A DNA stretch of 63,905 bases, filler included, from Octopus bimaculoides (taxonomy: Eukaryota): assembly GCF_001194135.2 (NCBI RefSeq). It is 6 parts of 6 records of this genome, joined end to end, with 100 filler letters (N's around TTAATTAATTAA, not from the genome) between each part and the next. Parts side by side here need not be neighbours in the genome. Positions count along the whole stretch, not along the records: positions 44,357 to 58,353 come from NC_068987.1; 5 more parts are not named here. One strand, given 5' to 3'. The notes under the pieces were generated by a model. The model was not told where the DNA came from. It saw nothing but the letters and a program-made list of their open reading frames with translations, and made no database searches. Shown here piece after piece: positions 2,001 to 52,568 of the stretch; the first letter of the stretch is position 1, and every line of letters starts with the position of its first letter. Made by a program: the position numbers and the translations under genes.

Positions 2001-3839
2001 AGGAAGTCACTTATAGGGGCCCCACTACTGGATATAGATTAAAGTTATACTCAGTGTATAGTAATATTGTAAAAAATATGTCATTCATTAGAAAATATAG
2101 TACACCTTACTTAATACAAAAATTCAATTCCCTCCCCACCACCAAGTTGCTTTCTCTTTACAAAAGTCAAGAAATATGCGCAGTTACTTCACACACACAC
2201 ATACATACACACACACACACACACACACTCACACGCACATAACTATTCGTAACGCGTCACTCGCAAGCAAGACCCCAACCCAATCAAACACACGTATTGT
2301 TTCAGCATTTTCCTTAGTTGATCCCTTCTTACATATTCTCTCCACGTATCTCATTCATGACTTAATATCCCCACTCCAATAACTCCGACTCACTTCTTTC
2401 TCCTTCTATCACCATCGTCCTTGTATCAACTCGAGACTCCAAACTATGAACAAACTTAGATTTCCCTCCCAAAAACTTTGCCTCTGTGATCGTAGGATTT
2501 TATTGAAGTCGTTCAAATTGCAGAGTAATTTCACCTTTCTTTGGAGAACCATAGTAAAATATTCAATAAAATGAAATTCATGGTAACATTATGTGAGCAA
2601 AGATTGGAGAAATGTATATAAATATGGGATTTTAAGAGAAATATAATGTGTTTAGGTTGATATATTGCCATATTTATTATCTCATGAAAGGAACACATGT
2701 AATACAGATATGGGTATTCATGGATATGTAATATAGATATGGGTATAAGTTGTAATGCAAAAATATAAAAATTCAGCAAAATTATTTCCACTTAAGGAAA
2801 AAACTTTATCCTTGTGTCAAAAATGTGGTATCTACATTACATATATAATTACACTTTCCTGTATTTACTCTACCTATAATTGTCCTGCTAAGTTAAACCT
2901 AATATTATGAAATGAATATCATCGTATTCCTATTTCTGTCATCTTAACAATTATTATGCAAAATCCACGCCGTATGTTCCTTGACAGGCATTTTTACATA
3001 CATTAATTGTATTGAATTCATCCTGTCATTCTTTCTCTGGATTCTCTTCCTTGAAATATACATTGCGATCAGTGTTGTTCTATTACAAGGAAATAATTTC
3101 AAGGTACAGGTTATTATATAATATCACTTAATCGTATATCCATTTTGATATATCAACGTGTGCACAAAATCCACTCTACTGCAGAAATGTAGAAAAGGTG
3201 TGTAGGTATTACAGAAACAAAGTGAGTATTATAAGTAAGTATATGGCATTTCTCGAAGAGATGAACCAATACGAAACACTATTTGTATTTCTCTATTCAG
3301 GAGTGAAAATTAATGCTCCATAATATATGAACATTCGAAAATGTAGATATGTGTATATGCATAACAATAAAAATCAGAAGTATAGTGTATGCATGTACAC
3401 GCAGGTGCAGACTCCTGTATAATTTATTATTGTTCGTGGATAACATTCTGCATATAATAGCACTCGATTTATCTGCGTCTCACAGTGATATATATATGAA
3501 GAAGATTACTTGAATAATAGCCGAAGTGTGAACATTTTGATGAAAAAACTTAACCAAGTGAGAAATAGGCAAATTTCATTGGACACGCAAGTATTCTTTT
3601 GACTGCAATTTATAAACTACCCCCGAAAATGTGCGAGATACTGTGATAGTTATGAATATCAATAAATATAAGAAAGCGTTGATAACTCAACCTTTCCGAA
3701 TTCATGTTAAGGCTTTTAGGATGTAACAATTGCTATTGGCAGGTAGTGTACTTATTCATATGAGAGAGACAAGAAGTGAGTGAGCAATATGGTTGTAATA
3801 GAGGCAGAAACAAACATAGAATCAAAGGGGAAACACTCG

Positions 3840-3960
3840 ACTAAAAACAAACATATGAAAACCAGAAACACATAATTATTTAACCCACCGTGAGCCAAAG
3901 ACACAATTATTCAACATATTGTAAACCCCCAAATATATGGTATGTTTCATACACATACAC
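3840..3960 (+). mobile_element. Possible Penelope-like remnant
   Basis: RNT*LFNPP* at ~3863-3893 resembles the RNIIWFNPP motif that follows the RT in many PLEs. Single motif only. Confidence 0.2.
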
Positions 3961-5029
3961 CTACATATGTCATCAGGTTGGCACTGTTCTGAGTAGAAAT
4001 ACCGATTGAAAGACATATGACAGGTATATTCTCTTTCTCTTTAATCGGAAGGAATTTCTTCGACGAACGTTTTTGCTATTTTTTTTTAACAACTGTAAGA
4101 GACACAAACTTGATATAACATTTCCAATCTTTCAGTGAAAGAGGGGAGGTGGCATATTATTCGGTTCATCGATAAGCCACTTGAGAATGGCTACTGAAAA
4201 GGTCATGATTCTGACAGTGCCCCAATATAGCAGGAACACTTGAGCTGAAACGCTTCAGAGAATATAGGAACATTCACACATAAACATATCGTATATATAC
4301 GCCTTGCGTGTGTGTGCGCGCATGCATGTCTATATTTATATATGTGTGTTTGTGTGCCTATGTTTATATGCGTGTGTGTGTATGTGTGTGAGTGATTTTG
4401 CGTGCGTGTATTTATGTATGTGTGTGTGTATGTGTGTGTATGCGCGCACGCGTGTGTATGTGTACACAACAAGAAAAATGCTATCGAGACTTTATCTCAA
4501 TTCTTGGTGAAGACATTTTTCATCAAAATACTCAAGAATTATTAATAAAATTAAATTGTCTTTTAGTTATATGCTATCTTGTGCATACCGTTATTGAATA
4601 AACACAAAGTAACTTCCTATTCATTATATGAAAAAAATGAACTTAACTTGCAAGAAAAATGTCCGCTATCTAACATCTGCCTACCTAAATACAAATATAT
4701 TCGTGTCAGTGCGTGTATGTTTGTATATATGAATGTGTATATCTTTTGTGTTTAATAATTTAAGTTCTTCCTCTGAAGAAGGAAGCTTTTCTTTTCACAA
4801 AGATACAAAATTCCATCAGTGTAATGTAGACAAGGAAAACAATGTCACATTTTAAACACAAGTAAAGTCTTCCGTAGGTCTACTACTCTGCTTACAGATT
4901 GTATTTGCAATGTGCTAATCAGTAGGTTGATTTCTCTTTCGGAAAATCTAGCCTAATCCTGACTGACAGGCATTTACTTACAAAATCAAGTGCTCCAGTT
5001 ATTGGTATAAATGTAAATTGTTATGTATG

Positions 5030-5063
<34 letters not shown>

Positions 5064-7619
5064 TGTATGTATGTATATATGTATGTATGTATGAACGAAT
5101 GTATAGATGTATGGATTATGCATGCATGTACATATGTATGTATGTATGTAATTATTTATGTATGTATGTATGTATGTAAGTATCCGTGTAGCTTACGGAG
5201 AAACAGAAATGAGAGAAATGCATAGAAATATATTATTCATATCAGAACCTGAAGTCCAAGTGACTATGCTGCTACTACTATACTTAGTTTCGAAACTCGA
5301 AACTTACGCTGGCGATTGTCATTTAATTGACAATTTAACCATTTAGTTTTCTGTTGTATCACAAAATACAAATATTCCTATCAGTTTCCTCCTTTCAAAA
5401 ATATTGAATGTAAGATAACAATTAAGATATTGCTCACATTTGACACAAGTATACCAGCCTTGGTTGATAACCACAAATTAATTATATATCCACACGTAGT
5501 TTCCAAGAAATTACAATATTAAAGCATTATTTAGCAGAATATACCTTTCATCAATTTTTCAGTCAACACAAAATATTTTAGAATACTTTCTCTTTATCGT
5601 ATTAAATGTCTGCTGTTATAAAGTAATATTCTATACGTTTATATTTACGGACACCACTATAAATTGAAAGTAAAATACTACACATTAATAATATCATTAA
5701 AAGCAATCTGTAACATACTTATTGCTACTTCTATTTCTCACATCGTACATATGTATTTGCGGCAATAATTTTAAGATAACAATCAGATCGGCAAAGTGGT
5801 TACTGTAATTAGATATCTGACACGATGCTAGATTTGAAGATATGTTCCTCACACGAGAGAGTGAGATCAAGTAAACACCAATACCATAATTCACAGTGAA
5901 AATTTTAGCTACTCTTCACTGTAATGCACATTTTAGGTAGTATACTTTTTATTCATTCCAAAGAGGATTCGCGAAACAAAACAGTTTTCCATATTTCGTA
6001 ATGTATTTGCATTGGTTAGGGATAATGTAATATTTTTTAACTGTAGCAAATGTTCGAACTGAAAACACGTTGACATATTAACTAATGAGTATCCCACATT
6101 TTCATTGAACATGACACATTTTATTTAACCCTGTATGAAAAAACGCTTTCGTTTCAACCCTTAAAAATATTTGTATAATACATTATGTGTCTGTGTGTTG
6201 CGTGCGCGTCAAATTTTGGTTTAGAATACAATATTGAATCACAAGGTCGTTTGCCTACGTCGTAGAACTAAGCTATTAATTGTCCCATCATTCTCGTCAT
6301 TGTTTCCTTTATTTGTTTAGTGAGCTTCGCTGTTATTGTTTAACTCTTGATTTGCACTACTAGTGTGATCAATTCCAATCTAACAGAGATCAGCTCATCA
6401 ATTGTTTTAAACTGAGTGGGTCTAGTACACTATTTTATAAAGCGTTCAGGGTTCACTTGATTTCTATTTGAGTGAGGTCTAAGTAGCAGATAAAGCAACC
6501 CTTTGTAGTCTCGTATGCTTGGTTGTGCTTTCGATATATTAGAGAAAAAAAAGACCATAGAATTCAAATAATTCCTGTCAGCATATATAGATTAATGAAA
6601 AACGCTTTTATGTTTCCTTAAGAGATTTATAAAATAATATAAAACTGAACTGCCATGTATAGCATTAAAACCGTTGAAAAAGTGATATCTAAAGTAAAGT
6701 CAATAAATATTTATAACAGCTATTGTAAATATCTGAGACTGCAGAGAGAAATTAAAACTGACTTTCAAACTTTTCGTAAATGGAATTCCTGTGATAAATT
6801 GTCTTTCTCCTGATTGTCCGTGCTAATTTTTTTTTTTTTGTACAGTTCTTTATTGGGGAAAAGAAATTATACAACACATTAACGCATTCTCAATCAACTA
6901 AAGAAATAATGGATATTTTTCTTGCTTCTTTTTGAGTTGTTAATTTTGGTAATCAGCCATCTTCACCGTTTTCGAAATTTCTGAAGTTTGTAACCTCTTC
7001 CTTCTTTCACTACTTTCGACCCATATGGGAAATGATCTTAGGGTAATGAGGCATCAAACGTACGACTGTAACAAATGTATAAAAAATACTTTTAGCATGA
7101 AGTAGTAGTGTTTGCTATATTATACTATCAGTCCTCGTTAATAAAAGCGCTACTGTTCTTAAACTAAAACCTAAGAGAATACTAATGTTATGCAAACGTA
7201 TGATTTAGTTATTCCTAATTATTTTCGCCATTTTAATTAGTGCCATAACAAGTTGATAATACTAGGACATAGAAAATTCTTTGAAAATTCTTTAAAAATT
7301 CCATTCTTCTATGTCAGACACTACGCTTGGGAGCCTATATACGTTTACGTGATGAGCACGAAAATGTAGCCAAATTATATTAGGTTACATCTGAATTCAG
7401 AAAAACGGTAAAAAAAAGCACATCATAATCTAATTCTACGTACAAGATGTTGAGAAAAAAATTATATATACATATAGTTGGAGTGTTTTTTTTTTTCATT
7501 AAGCGTTGATTATCCAAGGGTTACGCGAATCTAAATAACCAACAACGACATTTAAAGCCGCTCTCAATGGTTTCGAATTTGCTGGTTGTAATCTAATTTA
7601 ACTTTGAAAAGACTATGTA

Positions 7620-8451
7620 CGCGGTCTGATAAGTAACTATCCAGCCTGTTGTCATACTAACGAAGCTAAACCACACAAAGTGAAGTAGCTTAGCATAAAC
7701 TGACCTTGAAATCTAATGTGTATGCGCACTAAGTTTTAGCGTGCTAGCTTACTTCGAATGTTCACAGCAGTGCTTGGTAAGAAGGTGCTTAGTGTGTGAT
7801 CATCACATTGGCCATGACAGAGAAAGGCTTCATGGTGAAACCTGATCATAGGCCTAAACAAAGTCACATAAATTGTATGGAGAAGGGTGTATGAGCCGCA
7901 CACAAGTGTTCGAGATGTTTCAGGCGTTTACAAGATGGCCAAAAAAAGGTCGATATTGACGAAAGTTCTGGAAGACCCGCAATCAGCAGAACTAAAAAAA
8001 AAACATAGCAGATGTGCGTGCAACTATGAGGCAAATCGTCGAATCACGATTGGTGTATGAGACGCATGTCTGCCAAGTTTGCGCCAAAACTGCTTTCAGG
8101 TGACCAAGAAGGCACTCGCGTTTCAGTTGCACGACATCTCCTTGATTGTGTCAAGAATGATGACAACTTTTAAAAACTTTGCGTAGGCCTCTGAGCAGGT
8201 ATCGCCAACTTGTTGACAAAATTTGATGCAAATTCTCTGCTCAACTTGCTCTGTAATGATCAATTCGACAATCACACGCAACACACCTTCATTCCAAGCA
8301 TTGCTGTAAACAGTGGAAGTAAGCTAGAACCTTAAAAATTAATGCGCATCCACAACAGAGTTCATGGTCAATCTGTGCCAAGACGCTTAACGCTGCCTGC
8401 TTTAACTTTGTTACTATAGCAACAGTCCGGGTACGTATTGATCATATCACG
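7620..8451 (+). mobile_element. Internally deleted mariner derivative with a long inverted (foldback) right arm
   Basis: TA flanks at 7618-19 and 8452-53; degenerate TIRs CGCGGTCTGATAAGTAACTATCCAGCCTGTTG vs CGTGATATGATCAATACGTACCCGGACTGTTG. Plus strand encodes LYGEGCMSRTQVFE, SSGRP and MRRMSAKFAPKLL; minus strand of ~8170-8240 encodes EQRICIKFCQQVG (transposase N-terminus). Confidence 0.8.
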
Positions 8452-44489: not shown

Positions 44490-45011
44490 CATTTATACAT
44501 GGGTTTGTTTTGATATTAAGATTGAAAATAATCAACCTTCTTTGTAAAAACTTTTGGATCTGAGTTTTCAGCCCGTAAACAAACATCGAGCCCGCACTTA
44601 TGGCCCGAACATCTTAGACAATAACAGATCATGTGGTCATGCGTGACCTGTCTCTGCGTAAAAGGGGCAAAGGTTACAACTTAAATAGCTGCGATCATGA
44701 TATTACTTTATTGAGAAAGCCTTGGGTTAAATGACAACAGCAATAATGTAAATAACAAACTAAAAAAAAACAACCAACAATTAGATATATGAAATCATAC
44801 AAAACTCCTTTGATATGAAAATCACATTCTTAGGAAACTCATTTATCAAAATATTTCAATCGTCAACTGTGAACAATAGCGACGTTGTTATTCGTTTCCA
44901 TCGAATCAATCAATGCCTGACTCCCTTTCTTCTGGTGTGCGTGAGTAACAATAGGATGTCTGCAACTCGATGGACATCGATTACGGAGCACTTGTTGGTG
45001 CAACTTCGAAG

Positions 45012-45620
45012 GGATCTTTTTTAAAACGGGGGCCACATTTTTCATTAACGAAACACTTTGAAACTTGGAACACTGGTAGAATGTGTCATATAAAACATCT
45101 TTTTCTCTTAGTCTTCTTTAAAAAAAAAAGAAATCCATAAGTTATTCCATGTTAAAGTTGTCGTATTTCTGTAATTTCAACCAATCACTGACGTCCATTC
45201 AGCCGATATACATTAAGTGCCGACTACATAAACAAACGATTCTGAAACAATTAACCCTAACCCTAACCCTAACCCTAACCCTAACCTAGGGTTAACCTAG
45301 GGTTAGGGTTAGGGTTAGGGTTAGGGCTAAAGCAAATTTAAAATGAAAAAAGCAAATAAAACGAAGCTATGGAGATTAAATACACTTTACACCGCTTAAT
45401 CAGCCAAAGGAGTAAATGTAAACAACTGAATACTTGTCAGTGATTGGTTGAAATTATCGAAATAAGACAATTTTTTACATGAAATAAATTCGAATACAAA
45501 AATATTTTTCTGTTCTATAACACAAAATAGATAAGTATACGAAGTTTGAGAGTCTTTCCGTACCAAAAACACTACGTAAAACATTAATGAAAAATGTGGC
45601 CCCCGTTTTAAAATAGATCC
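45012..45620. mobile_element. MITE, copy 1: GGATC TIRs, 8-bp TSD, internal inverted repeats, central telomeric palindrome
   Basis: TSD CTTCGAAG (45004-11 and 45621-28); 37-bp TIR with 1 mismatch; internal IR 45158-45202 / 45426-45470; telomeric repeats 45252-45326. Confidence 0.93.
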
Positions 45621-45935
45621 CTTCGAAGATCAGTTTTTATCACGTCTCAAAGACTACGCTTTCTCTTCAGATGTAGAAAATACTTGCTGCATTGATATCG
45701 GTAACTCAGTGTTTTCTAGGAAGGAAGCACTGCTTAAACAAACACAAATATGAAACACCACATCCGAAAGACAGATATTAATCCAAGTGGGAAACATCCA
45801 TTTAAAATCTCCTGATATCAACGCAACACCTATAACCTCCGCTACGCACAACTTGATACAGGCAGACTGTCTTCATACACAATTTCACAACCCTCTCTCT
45901 CTCTCTCTCACTCACTCACTCACTCTCTTCTCTCA

Positions 45936-45999
<64 letters not shown>

Positions 46000-46029
46000 C
46001 ACACACACATATATATATACACACACATA

Positions 46030-46427
46030 TATATATACACACACATACACACAGGCACCTACGACGGCCTTCTTTCAGGTTTCATCTACCAAATCCATTG
46101 ACAAGGTTTTGATCGGTCCCAGGCTACAATGGAAGGCACGTACCCAATGTGCCACTCTGCGGGACTGAACCCGGAACCATATGGTCGGACTGCAAGTGTA
46201 CATCTATGCAAACTTACAAATATATACATTCATAGACATAATACACAAATATTCTGAAGCTGATGACGAGAATCTTCCTTTATTAATATGTTTATATGTT
46301 AAACAGTTTCTTTTCTTGAGTTTCAATTTGGCAAACCTTTGCTTCCAAATGGCACTCTTCCACCCAAACGCTGCTCTTATGGCGCTGGAAACTCAATTAA
46401 CGAAGCTTCAAGATTTTAGTTATCTAT

Positions 46428-46491
<64 letters not shown>

Positions 46492-47040
46492 GCACACGAA
46501 TGTAGATATGTATATGTATTACATGAGTGTGTTTCTTCGTACGTGAACGGCAATGCATACATGGGAACGGGAAATGTTTAACATCCCTGCGAAGGGATGT
46601 AATTAAATCCCTAATATTTTCTTTTAGGTATTTGAGTGAATGATATTGAGTGAATGAGAAGTTAGCAGGCATGTTATCTGAATAATACGCCTGTATACGT
46701 ATAGACACACACGCACACACACGCACAAACACTCATTTACTAACATATATAAATACATGCATATACACATACCCATACATACCCATACATACCCATACAT
46801 ACATACACACATACCCATACATACATATTTTATCTTTTATTTGTTTCAGTCATTGGACTGCGGCAATGCTGGAGCACTACCCTCAAGGGTTTAGTCGAAC
46901 AAATTGACCCCATTATTTTTTTAAGCCTGGCACTTATTCCAACGGTCTCTGCTCCCGAACCACAAAGTTACAAGGACATAAACAAACCAACACTGGTTTT
47001 AAACGGTAAGGGAGAACAAGCAAAAACACAAAGACACACA
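46030..47040 (-). mobile_element. Family-A fragments (head ~46030-46200; tail ~46830-47040)
   Basis: GGGACTGAACCCGGAACCAT and GTTTCAGTCATTGGACTGCGGC. Confidence 0.75.
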
Positions 47041-47187
47041 CACTCACACATACACATAGAACACACAGAACGACACAAACACAGGTCCACGTGCACACAG
47101 ACACACATACATGCGCACGCTCGCACGCACGCACATGCACGTGCGCGCACACGCTCACACACACACACACACANNNNNNNNNNAAAA

Positions 47188-47740
47188 AAGCGAGGAGACT
47201 GATCAGCGCAGAACAAGTACAATGCCACCTCTCTGCTTAGCACTACCGGCAACATTTACGTTAGAATTGTTCTGGATCGTCTGCTGGATGTTGTGAGAGA
47301 AGTCGTCCCAGAATCTCAATAAGGCTTTCGGCGGTCACTAGGAACGATTGACAGGATTTTCTATGTAAGGCAACTCCAGGAAAAGGCTCGTGAACAGCAG
47401 CAGTTACTCTTCTTCATCACCTGGGACCTTCGCAAAGCCTTCGGCAAGGTTCTCTGATAAGCGATGTCGTCTGTACTCCGTCGCCTTTGTTTCCCCTATC
47501 ATTTCGTCGACCTCATCATTGCACTCCATGACGGCATGGCACAACATGTCTGCACGCAGAATGCACTGTCTGAGCCATTCCCCATCTCCGGATGCCTGAA
47601 AAAGGGCTAACTTCTGACTCCAAATTCGTTCTCTATCTACCTGGCGGCGATGCTCCACGAGATCCAGCGCAACTCTCCTGGTTTTCACATCCACTGTCAT
47701 CCGGAAGGTGGATTATTTCAACCTCGTGCGCCTGAAATAA
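47188..47740 (+). mobile_element. RTE (BovB-like) reverse transcriptase fragment, pseudogenised
   Basis: KRGD...YNATSLLSTTGNIYVRIVLDRL...VPESQ*GFRR...IDRIFYVRQLQEKAREQ...WDLRKAF...LIIALHDGM...SEPFPIS...FSIYLAAML. Confidence 0.9.
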
Positions 47741-47757
47741 AAAGAAATAACAGGCGC

Positions 47758-47914
47758 ATACTTAAGCTTTCACACTTATTATACACACCGTTAATGGAAA
47801 TACAATTATCAATGAGCGAACCTTTGTCCCTCTATACGTAGTCGCTTGACCTGTTCTAAAAAGCAACTCTATATCTCTTAGATCACTGAAAGTGTACAGT
47901 TTTGGAAAGGAACA
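47758..47914 (+). repeat. 157-bp direct repeat, copy 1
   Basis: About 9 mismatches to 49618-49774 by manual alignment. Confidence 0.9.
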
Positions 47915-48124
47915 TGTAGGAGCATATGGGCCTTTAAAATTTAATTCAATTTTATTTAATTCTTTATTTATGGGGACCATGTGACCAATAGGAAGATCTC
48001 TATTTTACTGTTTCAGTGAATTTGTGTATATACATGTGTAGGTATATGTATAATTATGTGATCACGTGATTGACCACATGATCGGATTTTGTTATACATT
48101 GCTGGTAACAATGCGCTTCCCATC

Positions 48125-48343
48125 GTTTCAGCTTTCGAATAATGGGGACCACTGGTTAAGCGAACAACCCACTATTCCTGCTGTTCGGAAGGATATTCCG
48201 TCCCAGAGTGAAGCAGTTATTGCTGAGTGAACTGGAGCAATGTGAAACGAAGAGTACCGGCTGGTGCAGGAATCGAACTCACAATCACTAGATCTAGCGA
48301 CGAACGTGAGTGCAACACCCTAACCACTAAGCCACGCGCCTTC
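48125..48343 (-). mobile_element. Family-B-like tRNA-derived SINE
   Basis: GCGCGTGGCTTAGTGGTTAGGGTG...GAGTTCGATTCC head on minus strand; CTGAGTGAACTGGAGCAATGTGAAA core. Confidence 0.75.
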
Positions 48344-49617
48344 ACGGACTTGTATGTGAGTGTACGTGTGTGTGTACACATGCACACACATGTATGTAGA
48401 TTAGTGTACACGTGTAGAAGCGATGATGTATGTAGATATCAAACGAATTGCTGTTAAGAATGTCATTAAGCATCCAAAGACAAGTTGATGTTGTTTGTAT
48501 GTGTCAGATTGGGAAGTGAGAGGGGGAGATTAAGGTAGCAGAGTAGGGGTGGGAGGGAGAGCAAAAGAGGGGGAGGAGAATAGTATCAAAAATGGTGGGA
48601 AATAGAAACCTACTCACAGAATCAGGATGGGTGGGCCTTCGCTGTGAAATGGTTATGTGTGTGTGTGTAGGAGTGCGTGTGTATGTGAGGGTGCGCATGT
48701 GTGAGGGGATTGTAAAAAAAACCTCAATCTACGGTCTCTCCCCTCCCTCTTCCAACAACATCAATTTTCCTAAACTCGCGGTCACCACCTCCTCTACCAA
48801 GTCCCCCCCCCACACACACACACAATCGCCACCGCAGTCACCACCACTGCGATCTACAAAAACCTGACAGAGGCCACCTGTGCTGGAGTGTTAAAAAAAT
48901 GTTAATTAAGCTTCTTTTTTTACGTTTTTTATGATAGGAGACGAGGTTTTAAACTGTCCGACATAATAATATATTGAGTGACTACCCAGATATATACCCC
49001 AGTTATCCTCCACCCTGATAACCAGTTAGACATCCATCCATTTTGTTATTTATGTATGAAGCCATCGACGGCCATCAACGTCGAACATTGTAACAACTGC
49101 ATCGTTACTTTTGCCCACACCCCCAACGACACCATCACCAACAAACCAACCTATGTACCTCAACCTGGTCCCTCGACATGCTAAAAAAAGCAACCAAATT
49201 TCCAGTAGATTATACCGTAAAGTTTTAGAAAAAGAATAATTTGGAGAATATGGGGCTGGGATCTTTATCCAGAGTAAAACGACTGGATGGTCACCACTGG
49301 AACCCCTTTCATCATAAGTCTACTTAATCAATGTTGGGCTTCGGCTAAGCAACAATAACAAGAAAATCAATACTTATACATCAACGCCATTATTCATGAA
49401 GCAACATAGCAGCCAAATCTCCCTCAAAACCTCACTGCTGTCTGGTGGTGCTAGATATATTGTGTCTGGAGAAAATGGAGAAAATGGAGAAAATCACTCG
49501 TTGAATGTTTTTGATCATAAGTCTTTCATCCTAAATCTATTCAATCAAGACTGACTTTATGTCAACACATAAACAACAGCAACAACAACATTAGTCATGA
49601 ACTAACATGGGGTAGAA

Positions 49618-49774
49618 ATACTTAAACTTTCACACTTATTATACACACCGTTAATGGAAATACAATTACCAATGAACGAACCTTTGTCCCTCTATACGTA
49701 GTCGCTTGACCTGTTCGAAAAAATAGCTCTATATCTCTTAAATCACTGAAAGTGGACAGTTTTGGAAAGGAACA
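49618..49774 (+). repeat. 157-bp direct repeat, copy 2
   Basis: Lies 1860 bp from copy 1, in the same orientation. Confidence 0.9.
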
Positions 49775-49974
49775 GTGATGGATTGGATCTGTAGTCTTCG
49801 AATTAGCCTTCTCCTTTCTTCTTTTCAGAAGCCTAATATCTCAAGATTGGTATTTAGGCAGTGTGTTACATATCACAGGGCCCCAGTAATTGCCGGTATA
49901 AACCTGAACTTCTAATCTAGAGTAACTGCAGATTTATGTATGTATGTATGCATGTATGCATGTATGTATGTATG

Positions 49975-50005
<31 letters not shown>

Positions 50006-50212
50006 GTCTAGTCATTGCGAGATAACAATCTGATCTCGTATATGTATATATATATNNNNNNNNNNNNNNNNNNNNNNNNNNNNNNNNNNNNNNNNNNNNN
50101 NNNNNNNNNNNNNNNNNNNNNNNNNNNNNNNNNNNNNNNNNNNNNNNNNNNNNNNNNNNNNNNNNNNNNNNNNNNNNNNNNNNNNNNNNNNNNNNNNNNN
50201 NNNNNNNNNNNN

Positions 50213-50288
<76 letters not shown>

Positions 50289-51173
50289 TTTCTCGTTATG
50301 GTAAGATCAACAAAAGACACTCCTTTCAGTGTCATTTAATGTACACAGTAAAAAGAGACGACCTTCTATTAGTTTCTTGCTGCGGAAACACGAGTCTAGG
50401 TATGTTTTCTCCAAACCATACCTCAAATTCAGGCTCAAATTCAGTTTTCAAAACAGGACACTGGTAAATTCATATAAAAGAAATAACAGTCAGTAAAAGG
50501 GAAGTTTAGCTTAGATAATGAGAAATTATAATGATTTTATATAATGGGAAAATGTCTTGTAGAATTAAGCCTGCAAGCAAAGAATACGTCAGAGATGCGA
50601 TTTAGTACAGAGGTTTCATATTGGCATAGTATAGGGAGCGATGCGATTACTTGCAATTTAAAGAGTTCCACCTAAGTTATTGACCAGGACAATATTTAAG
50701 TGTGCCCTGGGTCTTGGGGTATAGTATGGAAGTAGGAAGGGAAGTAGATTGTTCAGACGTCCTGTTTGAGAAAAAGCTCCGGTGTGTATCTTAGCGCCAT
50801 TTGAAGCTGATTACAACTCCAATATAGACCTCAGCCTAATAGGAACGTGAAGTTGTGACCGTACATTTATACTCAAAGTTGTAGAGACTCGAAAATTACA
50901 ACTTTTCCAATAACTGAATTATCTTTCGTGGTCCTTACCTTGCGTCGCCGGTATCAAAGTGAGGGAATTTTGCATATTTAAGAGAAGTAAGTCGGGTTTA
51001 TGACTATTTCCTCCTGAGCCGAGACTATCGGCACTTGGAGGATCTGCGTCGACAGCAGAAACTATGGCATTTCAGTATAATTGGATAATGTAGCCGTAGT
51101 AGCATGCGTTGAAATTGATTGTGGGTTGGAAGCGTTTCAAATGGTGTTACTATTAACACGGTTATGAAAGAAG

Positions 51174-51249
51174 CCCGATTAGGGATTCTTCGAGCTCTTT
51201 ATTAGGTGCCCGATTAGGGATTCTTCGAGCTCTTTATTAGGTGCCCGAT
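51174..51249. repeat. Perfect 35-bp tandem duplication
   Basis: CCCGATTAGGGATTCTTCGAGCTCTTTATTAGGTG twice, then CCCGAT. Confidence 0.95.
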
Positions 51250-51649
51250 CTTATGCCTGTTAGAGGCAGTGTTTATAGATCTCAGATTTGGAGTGGAGGA
51301 ATATTCAATTTTAATAGAGTTTATTAAAAATGAAATAGTACTTATGCTCGTGTGGGGAATTGGAGTTGAGAATATTGAAGAAAAGTGAAAGAAAAAATTT
51401 AACATAAAGGGAGAACAGAGGTGCGAACCATAAGATCTTACGGCTTCTGTCTGTCAATGGTGATCAGAATTTATTCCGCGTCAAGGTTGGCCTGGTTACG
51501 ATTCTTCTACATAAAGCGTCAGCATCGCGGAGGTGTAGTGGAGGGAGTCGGCAGGTCGAAGAGTAGGGGTAAGTTTTAGGGGCTTAGTATCGCTGCAAGG
51601 AGTTGGAAGTTCTAGTTCGGTTTTCATTTTTGTATTGAGGATTTAGGAG

Positions 51650-52243
51650 GGATCTTTTTTAAAACGGGGGCCACGTTTTTCATTAACGAAACACTTTGAA
51701 ACTTGGAACACTGGTAAGATGTGTCATATAAAACATCTTTTTTCTCTTAGTCTTCTTAAAAAAAAAGAAATCCCTAAGTTATTCCATGTTAAAGTTGTCG
51801 TATTTCTGTAATTTCAACCAATCACTGACGTCCATTCAGCCGATATACATTAAGTGCCGACTACATAAACAAACGATTCTGAAACAATTAACCCTAACCC
51901 TAACCCTAACCCTAGGGTTAGGGTTAGGGTTAGGGTTAGGGCTAGGGTTAAAGCAAATTTAAAATGAAAAAAAGCAAATAAAACGAAGGTATGGAGATTA
52001 AATACGCTTTACATCGCTTAATCAGTCAAAGGAGTAGATGTAAACAACTGAATACTTGTCAGTGATTGGTTGAAATTATCGAAATAAGACAATTTTTTAC
52101 ATGAAATAAATTCGAATACAAAAATATTTTTCTGTTCTATAACACAAAATAGATAAGTATACGAAGTTTGAAAGTCTTTCCGTACCAAAAACACTACGTA
52201 AAACATTAATGAAAAAATGTGGCCCCCGTTTTAAAATAGATCC
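51650..52243. mobile_element. MITE, copy 2 (same family and orientation as 45012-45620)
   Basis: TSD TTTAGGAG (51642-49 and 52244-51); GGATC...GATCC termini; (TAACCC)4 TAGGG (TTAGGG)4 at 51889-51941. Confidence 0.93.
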
Positions 52244-52568
52244 TTTAGGAGTTCTAAGGGAATCTTATTGCAGCAGTTCTGGTTATAGCGAGGAGCAAAA
52301 TTATCGAAAATATCTTCCTTAGCAGTGAGGTTAATTATTCTAATGGAAATTCCTTTCACTATACTATTTAAAACGGATTTAGGATGATTAAATTGGATGC
52401 TGATGTATTTTAGGGATTCATTCGGTTTATGATAAGGTTAGAGGAAGCTAGATCCTAGGTCAAGAGTAATGTTCAAGTAGTGGCTACTTTGATGCGACCT
52501 TCAAAAGTGACCGAAAGGGTTTAGCTTTTGAAAAATTTGTAGACAGTTTTCTCGATACGCTTAATGGA

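What the first reader, a model, noticed from the sequence alone, without database searches (positions are those of the whole stretch)
45004..52251. Young MITE family carrying a central telomeric palindrome inside nested inverted repeats
Seen: two ~96% identical copies (45012-45620 and 51650-52243), each with its own perfect 8-bp TSD (CTTCGAAG; TTTAGGAG), so both arose by transposition. There are three nested symmetric layers: 37-bp TIRs starting GGATC; a 45-bp internal IR pair (TTGTCGTATTTCTGTAATTTCAACCAATCACTGAC..., containing CCAAT and, in the left arm, TGACGT); and a core (TAACCC)4-5 - CTAG - (TTAGGG)4. The array length differs between copies, but each arm keeps at least four G-tracts. Established: TTAGGG is the general molluscan telomere repeat; four tracts suffice for a G-quadruplex; GG termini with 8-9-bp TSDs fit Merlin better than typical CAG/TAG-ended hATs. 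The polarity is opposite to a chromosome-fusion scar. Inference: a non-autonomous, possibly Merlin-mobilised element that spreads short outward-facing telomere seeds, which could bind shelterin-type proteins, form cruciform or G4 structures, and explain interstitial telomeric signals.
Basis: partly seen in the sequence, partly recalled or inferred. Interest (0 to 1): 0.82.

Follow-up and report, generated by a model that had tools for sequence, protein, structure and literature searches.

The report
Octopus MITE with telomere-repeat palindrome
Two recent insertions of a ~600-bp non-coding jumping element, probably moved by a Merlin-type transposase in an octopus genome, carry a head-to-head block of telomere-type repeats at their centre; the element is real and unusual, but nothing found here shows that the telomere block has a function.

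Summary
There are two copies, at 45012-45620 and 51650-52243. They match at 579 positions with 12 mismatches; 16 of the 21 gap columns lie in the telomeric core. Each copy has its own perfect 8-bp TSD, GGATC...GATCC termini, ~37-bp TIRs, an internal inverted repeat and a central (TAACCC)n(TAGGGT)n block. In copy 2 that block is a perfect 50-bp palindrome. Neither assembly gap touches a copy.

The Merlin guess gains support but is not proven. On an Octopus bimaculoides contig, a DDE_Tnp_IS1595 (Merlin) ORF runs through Merlin 3' sequence straight into a 98-bp terminus that is 96% identical to the MITE's right end. That copy has no left end. Two other octopus Merlins checked here start with GG and make 8-bp TSDs.

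The functional idea is not supported. A sister family on the same contig has perfect TIRs and a perfect TSD, but its telomeric arrays are decayed and lie in the opposite order. So neither intact arrays nor an "outward" polarity is needed for mobility. An unrelated inverted-repeat element in O. sinensis has a one-orientation array at its centre.

Most likely this is a passenger telomere-motif microsatellite, made palindromic by template switching and changing by slippage. Repbase/Dfam and genome-wide copy counts could not be checked.

The parts
45004..45011 (.). Left target-site duplication of copy 1 (CTTCGAAG)
   Evidence: Identical 8-mer at 45621-45628; homology between the copies stops exactly here
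45012..45620 (+). MITE-A copy 1 (609 bp), GGATC...GATCC
   Evidence: 98.0% identical to copy 2 over aligned bases; no ORF above 62 aa, and that ORF has no homologue
45012..45048 (+). Left TIR of copy 1 (37 bp)
   Evidence: 36/37 complementary to 45584-45620
45142..45192 (+). Left arm of the internal inverted repeat, copy 1 (contains CCAAT and TGACGTC)
   Evidence: 52 nt, 86.5% complementary to 45436-45487
45252..45326 (.). Telomeric core of copy 1: (TAACCC)5.8, an 11-bp tandem duplication TAACCTAGGGT x2 at the centre, then (TAGGGT)4.8
   Evidence: TRF rows 45252-45286 and 45298-45326, 100% matches; read directly
45436..45487 (-). Right arm of the internal inverted repeat, copy 1
45584..45620 (-). 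Right TIR of copy 1
45621..45628 (.). Right target-site duplication of copy 1 (CTTCGAAG)
51642..51649 (.). Left target-site duplication of copy 2 (TTTAGGAG)
   Evidence: Identical 8-mer at 52244-52251
51650..52243 (+). MITE-A copy 2 (594 bp)
51650..51686 (+). Left TIR of copy 2
   Evidence: 24/25 complementary, then a 1-nt indel
51776..51829 (+). Left arm of the internal inverted repeat, copy 2
   Evidence: 55 nt, 85.5% complementary to 52058-52112
51889..51950 (.). Telomeric core of copy 2: (TAACCC)4.3 and (TAGGGT)6.3 sharing the central TA; 51889-51938 is a perfect 50-bp palindrome
   Evidence: TRF; self-BLAST 100% over 50 nt on opposite strands
52058..52112 (-). Right arm of the internal inverted repeat, copy 2
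52207..52243 (-). Right TIR of copy 2
52244..52251 (.). Right target-site duplication of copy 2 (TTTAGGAG)

Best explanation
This is a young family ('MITE-A') of ~600-bp non-autonomous cut-and-paste DNA transposons in an octopus genome, most likely Octopus bimaculoides.

How it moves: a transposase supplied in trans, most probably Merlin (IS1595-like DDE), binds the ~37-bp GG-initiated TIRs, excises the element and reinserts it with an 8-bp staggered cut. Shown: two independent insertions with perfect TSDs. Inferred: which transposase does it.

What the centre is: a short telomere-motif hexamer microsatellite carried as a passenger. It probably entered the non-palindromic central loop of an ancestral inverted-repeat element as a one-orientation array, for example by telomerase-assisted repair of a break. 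It was then made palindromic by an intra-array template switch (quasi-palindrome 'correction'). That would give C-then-G in MITE-A and G-then-C in the sister family MITE-B. The array now changes by replication slippage. Shown: unit-number changes and an 11-bp tandem duplication between the two copies. Inferred: the origin.

What the centre does: it forms the tip of the long hairpin or cruciform that the element can adopt. Nothing indicates that it is needed for transposition or serves the host.
For: Mobility and youth:
- Perfect, different 8-bp TSDs, unrelated flanks and 2.0% divergence between the copies.
- No coding capacity.

Merlin as the partner:
- Merlin is defined by TIRs of 24-462 bp starting 5'-GG and by 8-9-bp TSDs (PMC8101967).
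- O. bimaculoides has the largest set of Merlin proteins among protostomes, 191. Merlin is recently active in O. vulgaris (PMC13282606).
- The 8.7-kb Merlin in L001/L003 starts GGCGATG and has perfect 8-bp TSDs, GCAAATCT and CAAGGCTT. The L005 Merlin starts GGTACT.
- In L004 (O. bimaculoides) the order is: ORF P0006 (Pfam DDE_Tnp_IS1595, E = 5e-17); a 3' UTR homologous to the L005 Merlin up to 4276; microsatellites; a 37-nt Merlin subterminal motif at 4468-4505 (30/37, 0 of 500 shuffles reach it); and then, directly, 98 bp that are 96% identical to the MITE-A right end and finish ...GATCC at 4602.

The array as a passenger:
- MITE-B (L004 5575-6284) has arms 87% identical to MITE-A, perfect 29-bp TIRs and a perfect TSD TAACGTTG. 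Its arrays are decayed and lie in the opposite order.
- Slippage-type differences separate copy 1 from copy 2.

Origin:
- The perfect 50-bp palindrome of copy 2 is flanked by 58 and ~110 nt that are not inverted repeats of each other.
- An unrelated inverted-repeat element in O. sinensis (L005, about 7050-7760) has a central array in the G orientation only.
- Every telomere-like array found in the 105 kb of octopus DNA sampled lies inside such an element.
- Telomerase-mediated insertion of TTAGGG at internal breaks is established in mammals (Nergadze 2004, 2007, as listed in PMC6410037).
Against: - No complete autonomous element was found with both MITE-A termini around a transposase. The L004 Merlin is truncated about 8 bp upstream of its ATG. 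Its terminal 98 bp show no detectable similarity to the termini of the 82%-identical O. sinensis Merlin (z <= 1.5). A truncated MITE fused to a truncated Merlin therefore cannot be excluded.
- An 8-bp TSD is shared with hAT, P, some Mutator elements, Novosib and Zisupton. Both window TSDs happen to fit the hAT target pattern nTnnnnAn.
- The origin scenario is inference from three states (n = 4 elements). The C-then-G order cannot arise from simple two-sided telomerase healing.
- MITE-A's arrays are perfect while its arms are 13% diverged from MITE-B's. This could reflect recent renewal or selection rather than slippage homogenisation.
- Only about 22 kb of the presumed host genome could be examined.
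Confidence: 0.6

Rival explanations
1. The MITE is mobilised by a hAT transposase, or by another superfamily with 8-bp TSDs such as P, Mutator, Novosib or Zisupton. On this view the Merlin ORF next to an A-type end in L004 is a chance juxtaposition of two truncated repeats in a repeat-dense genome.
For: - An 8-bp TSD is the hAT hallmark.
- Both window TSDs (CTTCGAAG, TTTAGGAG) have T at position 2 and A at position 7, the hAT target pattern (sequence; the pattern is from my own knowledge).
- hAT and Mutator have more recently active families than Merlin in O. vulgaris: 21 each against 2 (PMC13282606).
- The L004 Merlin lacks a left end, and its terminus is unrelated to that of its O. sinensis relative.
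Against: - The termini are GGATC, not the hAT YARNG (CAG/TAG).
- The MITE-B TSD TAACGTTG does not fit nTnnnnAn.
- In L004, Merlin-specific subterminal sequence (30/37, 0 of 500 shuffles) abuts the A-type 98 bp with no remnant of another Merlin end after the terminus. A chance fusion would need two deletions, one ending exactly at the MITE tip.
- Two octopus Merlin families verified here show GG starts, and one shows perfect 8-bp TSDs.
Confidence: 0.2
2. The telomeric core is a selected cargo: paired, outward-facing telomere seeds that recruit TRF/shelterin-like proteins, form G-quadruplexes or cruciforms, seed new telomeres after breakage, and account for interstitial telomeric signals.
For: - In both MITE-A copies each arm keeps at least 4 perfect units although unit number differs.
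- TTAGGG is the experimentally determined cephalopod telomere motif (Adachi 2014, cited in PMC13218726).
- MITE-A's arrays are perfect while the arms have diverged 13% from MITE-B.
Against: - MITE-B inserted with perfect TIRs and TSD while carrying decayed arrays (about 3 intact G-tracts on the short side) in the opposite order.
- The unrelated L005 element's array is also decayed.
- With n = 2 copies at 98% identity, retention of the arrays says nothing about selection.
- The adjacent complementary array pairs with the G array in the predicted fold, which competes with G4.
- 24-36 bp is far below cytological detection.
- No binding or expression data exist.
Confidence: 0.07
3. The whole element arose in one step as a palindrome. 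A single transposon end was broken internally and healed by telomerase. After replication, sister-chromatid (telomere-to-telomere) fusion or fold-back produced TIR-arm-array|array-arm-TIR, which a transposase could then mobilise.
For: - The inverted homology is collinear: TIR, subterminal segment (z about 4) and internal IR.
- MITE-B is palindromic nearly to its centre and has exactly the arm-to-G polarity this model predicts.
Against: - MITE-A has the opposite polarity (arm-to-C), which healing plus fusion cannot give.
- In MITE-A the 58 nt and ~110 nt next to the arrays are not inverted copies of each other.
- Each arm of MITE-A matches its counterpart in MITE-B better (85-87%) than it matches its own opposite arm (81-82%). 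The arms therefore differed before the families split, and before the present arrays formed.
Confidence: 0.12

Closest known systems
Merlin-superfamily non-autonomous elements (MITEs) of animals (Feschotte 2004; survey in PMC8101967)
   Same: 5'-GG termini, a TIR length within the 24-462-bp range, 8-bp TSD, small size, no ORF, and a host (O. bimaculoides) unusually rich in Merlin transposases. One Merlin copy ends in the same 98 bp.
   Different: A central head-to-head telomere-motif palindrome and a second, internal inverted-repeat pair. No such core came up in the papers I could search. A complete partner with both ends was not found.
Short interstitial telomeric sequences inserted by telomerase at double-strand breaks (Nergadze et al. 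2004, 2007; reviewed in PMC6410037)
   Same: A few exact TTAGGG units at an internal site, with no subtelomeric context. This is a plausible source of the ancestral array. The one-orientation array in the L005 element looks like this class.
   Different: Those insertions have a single orientation and are not mobile. Here the array is an inverted pair and rides on a transposon, so one acquisition is copied to many loci.
Fusion-type ITS (e.g. human 2q13, head-to-head TTAGGGn-CCCTAAn)
   Same: Two telomeric arrays in inverted orientation. The sister family MITE-B has this G-then-C order.
   Different: MITE-A is C-then-G, is only 50-75 bp long, is bounded by TIRs and TSDs, and exists in multiple copies. 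It is not a chromosome-fusion scar.
Foldback-type transposons (Drosophila FB, Galileo) and hairpin-forming MITEs
   Same: Extensive inverted homology allows a long hairpin or cruciform (z = -12 to -15).
   Different: The arms are not built of tandem subrepeats, the inverted homology is interrupted, and TSD length and termini differ (FB 9 bp; Galileo 7 bp, P superfamily; from my own knowledge).
Telomere-bearing elements of ciliates (Oxytricha TBE1, Tetrahymena Tel-1)
   Same: Transposon-like elements physically associated with telomeric repeats.
   Different: In those elements the repeats are at the outer termini in chromosome-end polarity. Here they are internal, at the axis of symmetry.

Membership tests
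MITE (non-autonomous TIR DNA transposon) | Short element (<~800 bp) bounded by terminal inverted repeats | tested here: met
   609 and 594 bp; TIR 36/37 complementary in copy 1
MITE (non-autonomous TIR DNA transposon) | Target-site duplications that differ between copies | tested here: met
   CTTCGAAG and TTTAGGAG, both 8/8; flanks unrelated
MITE (non-autonomous TIR DNA transposon) | No transposase coding capacity | tested here: met
   Longest ORF is 62 aa, with no homologue among 5.8 billion proteins; no Merlin tblastn hit anywhere in the piece
MITE (non-autonomous TIR DNA transposon) | Multi-copy, homogeneous family | tested here: inconclusive
   Seen: two full copies, one 98-bp end in L004 and one sister-family copy. 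The genome-wide copy number could not be counted.
Merlin superfamily | TIR begins 5'-GG (PMC8101967) | tested here: met
   Both ends of both copies, and of MITE-B, read GGATC
Merlin superfamily | 8- or 9-bp TSD | tested here: met
   8 bp in 3 of 3 complete elements. Octopus Merlin controls in L001/L003 also give 8 bp.
Merlin superfamily | An autonomous relative with the same termini that encodes a DDE_Tnp_IS1595 transposase | tested here: inconclusive
   In L004 an ORF with PF12762 (E = 5e-17) continues through Merlin 3' sequence into 98 bp that are 96% identical to the MITE-A right end. The copy lacks its left end, and only one such locus was reachable.
hAT superfamily | 8-bp TSD | tested here: met
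hAT superfamily | Short TIR with terminal YARNG (CAG/TAG) motif (my own knowledge of the family) | tested here: not met
   The termini are GGATC
hAT superfamily | Target preference nTnnnnAn | tested here: inconclusive
   Met by the two window TSDs, not by the MITE-B TSD TAACGTTG; n = 3
Fusion-type interstitial telomeric sequence | Head-to-head arrays in the order (TTAGGG)n(CCCTAA)n, at a unique locus | tested here: not met
   The order is (TAACCC)n(TAGGGT)n, inside a mobile element present at two or more loci
Telomerase-inserted short ITS | Array in a single orientation at a break site, not flanked by a TSD of its own | tested here: not met
   Two inverted arrays. This class may describe the ancestral state only (inference from the L005 element).
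Foldback elements | Long inverted arms made of tandem subrepeats | tested here: not met
   TRF finds no tandem repeats in the arms; the inverted homology is interrupted

The most novel reading that the evidence does not exclude
In octopus genomes the centres of hairpin-forming inverted-repeat transposons are recurrent sites of breakage and telomerase-assisted repair. The captured TTAGGG tracts are then made palindromic and copied around the genome by Merlin (and other) transposases. Most interstitial telomeric sequences in these genomes would then be transposon-borne, and some could act as TRF-binding or telomere-seeding sites at rearrangement breakpoints.
Probability: 0.15. Interest if true: 0.7.

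Novelty: new variant of a known kind. Interest (0 to 1): 0.42.

Why it matters
If confirmed genome-wide, this would be a clear sequence-level example of a mechanism that reviews only mention as a possibility: interstitial telomeric repeats spread by transposition rather than by chromosome fusion or local break repair.

It would also give cephalopod genomics three practical things. First, a curated Merlin-type MITE family with a candidate partner. Second, a warning that short TTAGGG palindromes in octopus assemblies are transposon cargo, not fusion scars or misassemblies. Third, a natural series for studying how palindromic centres evolve: one-orientation, G-then-C and C-then-G.

As it stands, this is an ordinary selfish element with an unusual passenger. 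No host function is indicated.

Tried and rejected
1. Recovering more copies through proteins. The 62-aa ORF of the right arm has no homologue, and ten window ORFs are not in the protein collection.
2. Exact TIR 27-mer scans of JGI metagenome contigs and GTDB genomes found nothing.
3. A 20-mer from the internal IR gave three hits that proved to be chance matches with no other similarity.
4. Reaching the host genome through the LINE reverse-transcriptase fragment at 47184-47760 gave only a mantis-shrimp protein and one ENA protein.
5. The O. bimaculoides v1 Merlin protein P0012 is not on record in the contig index.
6. ENA contigs carrying Merlin genes (L009-L011) share nothing with the MITE or the piece, so they come from other organisms.
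7. I tested whether the MITE-A termini resemble the TIRs of the O. sinensis Merlin that is 82% identical in protein. They do not (z <= 1.5). An ungapped 15/23 match of the first 23 nt is not evidence.
8. My first impression, 'the whole element is one degenerate palindrome', was rejected for the inner segments.
9. The left internal IR is 44/45 conserved between MITE-A and MITE-B. I considered this as a sign of constraint and rejected it: expected by chance at about 0.15 once the number of windows is allowed for.
10. Rfam gives only sub-threshold miRNA-hairpin matches on the core (mir-1258, 41.8 bits against a 74-bit cutoff). These are low-complexity hairpin resemblance, not membership.
11. Literature searches found no description of a MITE with a telomeric palindrome. 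Repbase, Dfam and most subscription papers are not covered by these searches.

Full report
**1. Observation**

Reading the piece directly and aligning the two regions confirms two copies of one element: 45012-45620 (609 bp) and 51650-52243 (594 bp).
- They share 579 identical positions, with 12 mismatches and 21 gap columns. That is 98.0% identity over aligned bases. BLAST reports 94% when gaps are counted.
- Sixteen of the 21 gap columns are in the telomeric core.
- Homology stops at GGATC on the left and GATCC on the right in both copies.
- Immediately outside lie perfect 8-bp direct repeats that differ between the copies: CTTCGAAG at 45004-11 / 45621-28 and TTTAGGAG at 51642-49 / 52244-51.
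- The flanks beyond are unrelated. These are two separate insertions, not a segmental duplication.

The TIR is 36/37 complementary in copy 1. An internal inverted pair (52-55 nt, about 86%, with a 21-nt perfect core TAATTTCAACCAATCACTGAC) lies about 130-180 nt from each end.

TRF reports (TAACCC)5.8 plus (TAGGGT)4.8 in copy 1, and (TAACCC)4.3 plus (TAGGGT)6.3 in copy 2. In copy 2 the two arrays share the central TA, so 51889-51938 is a perfect 50-bp palindrome. Copy 1 differs at the centre by a tandem duplication of the 11-mer TAACCTAGGGT, one lost C, and unit-number changes. These are all slippage-type events.

As single-stranded DNA the copies fold at -117 and -125 kcal/mol (z = -12 and -15). 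All inverted blocks nest, and the telomeric block sits at the tip.

**2. Assembly gaps**

The gaps at 47174-47183 and 50056-50212 sit in CA/TA/GT microsatellites between the copies, at least 1.4 kb from either one. No feature of the finding crosses them. Only the nominal 6.6-kb spacing and the relative orientation of the copies depend on the scaffold.

**3. Refinement of the 'three nested layers'**

A global alignment of each copy with its own reverse complement suggested homology along the whole arm. Segment-wise tests give a more limited picture:
- The ~110-nt segments between TIR and internal IR are weakly but significantly inverted copies of each other (score 19-20 against a shuffle mean of 11, z about 4).
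- The segments between internal IR and core (58 nt on the left, ~110 nt on the right) are not (z = 0.4-1.6).

The telomeric palindrome is therefore an isolated palindrome within a non-palindromic central loop.

**4. Coding capacity and context**

The longest ORFs in the element are 46-62 aa, and the 62-aa one has no homologue. The surrounding piece is repeat-rich:
- a decayed LINE reverse-transcriptase fragment;
- SINE-like units that match O. sinensis DNA at 74-76%;
- many microsatellites.

No Merlin coding remnant occurs in the piece.

**5. Reaching related sequence**

Direct pattern scans failed. The route that worked started from the literature. PMC8101967 states that Merlin elements have TIRs of 24-462 bp beginning 5'-GG and 8-9-bp TSDs. 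It also reports that O. bimaculoides has 191 Merlin proteins, the most among protostomes. I took one of them (KOF79200.1) from its S1 Appendix and used it as a query. I then fetched the genomic loci of three octopus hits:
- L001, L003 and L005 from O. sinensis;
- L002 from O. vulgaris;
- L004 from O. bimaculoides.

**6. What the loci show**

(a) Controls.
- The 8.7-kb Merlin in L001/L003 has ~355-bp TIRs that start GGCGATG, and perfect 8-bp TSDs (GCAAATCT, CAAGGCTT).
- The L005 Merlin (protein P0018, 82% identical to P0006) has 42-bp TIRs that start GGTACT.
- Octopus Merlins therefore behave as the published definition says.

(b) L004 carries a Merlin ORF, P0006, at 3223-4056 (Pfam DDE_Tnp_IS1595, E = 5e-17). 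Going downstream:
- The 3' UTR is homologous to the L005 Merlin up to 4276.
- About 190 bp of microsatellite follow.
- A 37-nt motif at 4468-4505 matches the L005 Merlin subterminal inverted repeat (30/37; 0 of 500 shuffles reach that score).
- Directly abutting it, 4505-4602 is 96% identical to the last 98 bp of MITE-A and ends ...GATCC.
- Nothing Merlin-like follows the terminus.

The simplest reading is that this Merlin copy ends in a MITE-A-type terminus, which makes it a relative of the autonomous partner. There are two caveats. The copy is truncated about 8 bp upstream of its ATG, so no left end is available. And the 98 bp are not detectably similar to the termini of the O. sinensis relative.

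(c) L004 5575-6284 is a 710-bp sister family, which I call MITE-B.
- Its arms are 87% identical to MITE-A, including the internal IR.
- It has perfect 29-bp TIRs (GGATCTTTGGGGTTTGACGGGCAACATTT) and a perfect 8-bp TSD (TAACGTTG).
- Its centre holds decayed telomeric units in the order G(~6)-spacer-C(~13), the reverse of MITE-A.

(d) L005, at about 7050-7760, holds an unrelated inverted-repeat element. Arm-to-arm score is 42 against a shuffle maximum of 22, and there is no similarity to MITE-A. Its centre is a decayed array in the G orientation only.

(e) I scanned all 105 kb of octopus DNA in hand for three or more telomeric units with at most 2 mismatches. Arrays turned up only inside these four elements.

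(f) No MITE-A or MITE-B copy occurs in the 83 kb from O. sinensis and O. vulgaris. Together with the 96% match in L004, this suggests that the window comes from O. bimaculoides or a close relative.

**7. Interpretation**

*Mobility.* Cut-and-paste insertion with an 8-bp stagger is shown. The enzyme is inferred. Merlin is favoured by the termini, the TSD length, the host's Merlin load and the L004 continuity. hAT is disfavoured by the GGATC termini, although both window TSDs fit nTnnnnAn and the MITE-B TSD does not.

*The core.* TTAGGG is the experimentally determined cephalopod telomere motif (PMC13218726, citing Adachi 2014), so the identity of the repeat is not in doubt. Its significance is.
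- MITE-B shows that an element of this lineage inserted cleanly while carrying decayed arrays in the other order.
- Intact tracts and the C-then-G polarity are therefore not required for transposition.
- Any head-to-head pair contains both orientations, so 'outward-facing' has no special mechanistic meaning for telomere seeding.
- Two copies at 98% identity cannot show selection on the array.

*Origin (inference).* The observed states are G-only, G-then-C and C-then-G. In MITE-A the perfect palindrome is flanked by non-palindromic sequence. Both points fit a two-step history:
- A one-orientation array is acquired in the central loop. Telomerase-assisted break repair of the kind documented in mammals is one way (Nergadze 2004, 2007; listed in PMC6410037). 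De novo microsatellite growth is another.
- An intra-array template switch then makes it palindromic (quasi-palindrome correction, a mechanism I cite from my own knowledge).

A one-step origin by sister fusion of a telomerase-healed half element predicts the MITE-B polarity. It does not predict MITE-A's. It also conflicts with the finding that the arms had already differentiated before MITE-A and MITE-B split.

**8. Comparison with what is known, and novelty**

The element meets the tested definition of a MITE. It meets two of the three Merlin criteria, and the third (a partner) is inconclusive. It is not a fusion ITS, a simple telomerase-inserted ITS, a foldback element in the strict sense, or a ciliate-type telomere-bearing element.

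Reviews mention transposition by mobile elements as a possible source of ITSs (PMC6410037). Four literature searches found no described MITE with a telomeric palindrome. The recent O. vulgaris repeat annotation (PMC13282606) lists Merlin and MITE families without mentioning telomeric content. Repbase, Dfam and the genome itself could not be queried, so the novelty is provisional.

**9. Verdict**

This is a real, young, probably Merlin-mobilised MITE family with an unusual telomere-motif palindrome at its centre. The functional story is unsupported and is partly contradicted by the sister family. Interest is moderate.

Noticed in passing
L004:5575-6284 (O. bimaculoides LGKD02092233.1): Sister MITE family (MITE-B): 710 bp, perfect 8-bp TSD TAACGTTG, perfect 29-bp TIR, arms 87% identical to the window's MITE. 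Its telomeric arrays are decayed and run G-then-C.
   Followed up: yes
L005:7050-7760 (O. sinensis VCDQ01004827.1): Unrelated inverted-repeat element (~140-nt arms; score 42 against a shuffle maximum of 22). Its centre (7398-7490) is a decayed (TTAGGG)~15 array in one orientation only. Boundaries and TSD were not resolved.
   Followed up: partly
L005:10778-11249: A 472-bp MITE with perfect 44-bp TIRs (GGGCGATGTTTCG...) interrupts the Merlin transposase ORF of L005. Its TIR matches the termini of the 8.7-kb Merlin of L001/L003, so one Merlin family's MITE has inserted into another Merlin.
   Followed up: partly
L001:4266-12990 and L003:4253-12991 (O. sinensis): Large (8.7 kb) Merlin element, 99.6% identical between two chromosomes. 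It has ~355-bp TIRs, a second internal 344-bp inverted pair, and perfect 8-bp TSDs. The same element is present in O. vulgaris (L002).
   Followed up: partly
L010:5936-9196 (ENA ERZ26222911 contig, organism unknown): Three 104-aa DDE_Tnp_IS1595 gene fragments spaced exactly 1473 bp apart, downstream of a 268-aa Merlin gene. A Merlin fragment appears to have been amplified as a tandem repeat.
   Followed up: no
window 47758-47914 and 49618-49774: A 157-bp direct repeat pair, 94% identical and 1860 bp apart, lying between the two assembly gaps. It could be two copies of a short dispersed repeat or the ends of a small element. Not characterised.
   Followed up: no
window 47184-47760: Decayed LINE reverse-transcriptase fragment (Pfam RVT_1, E = 3.5e-11, several stops) that begins right after the 10-N gap. 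Its closest database proteins are from a mantis shrimp and an ENA assembly (53-54% identity), not from an octopus.
   Followed up: partly
window 51173-51249: Perfect 35-bp tandem duplication (2.2 copies of GCCCGATTAGGGATTCTTCGAGCTCTTTATTAGGT), 400 bp upstream of copy 2. The unit happens to contain TTAGGG once.
   Followed up: no
window 45255-45329 and 51887-51951: The telomeric core gives sub-threshold Rfam matches to miRNA precursor families on both strands (mir-1258 at 41.8 bits against a cutoff of 74; also MIR5185 and mir-7973). This is a hairpin resemblance only, but it shows the core would fold like a pre-miRNA if transcribed.
   Followed up: partly
window 45953-46196 and 46829-47058: SINE-like dispersed repeats that match several places in the O. 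sinensis locus L005 at 73-76% identity. This supports an octopod origin for the piece.
   Followed up: no
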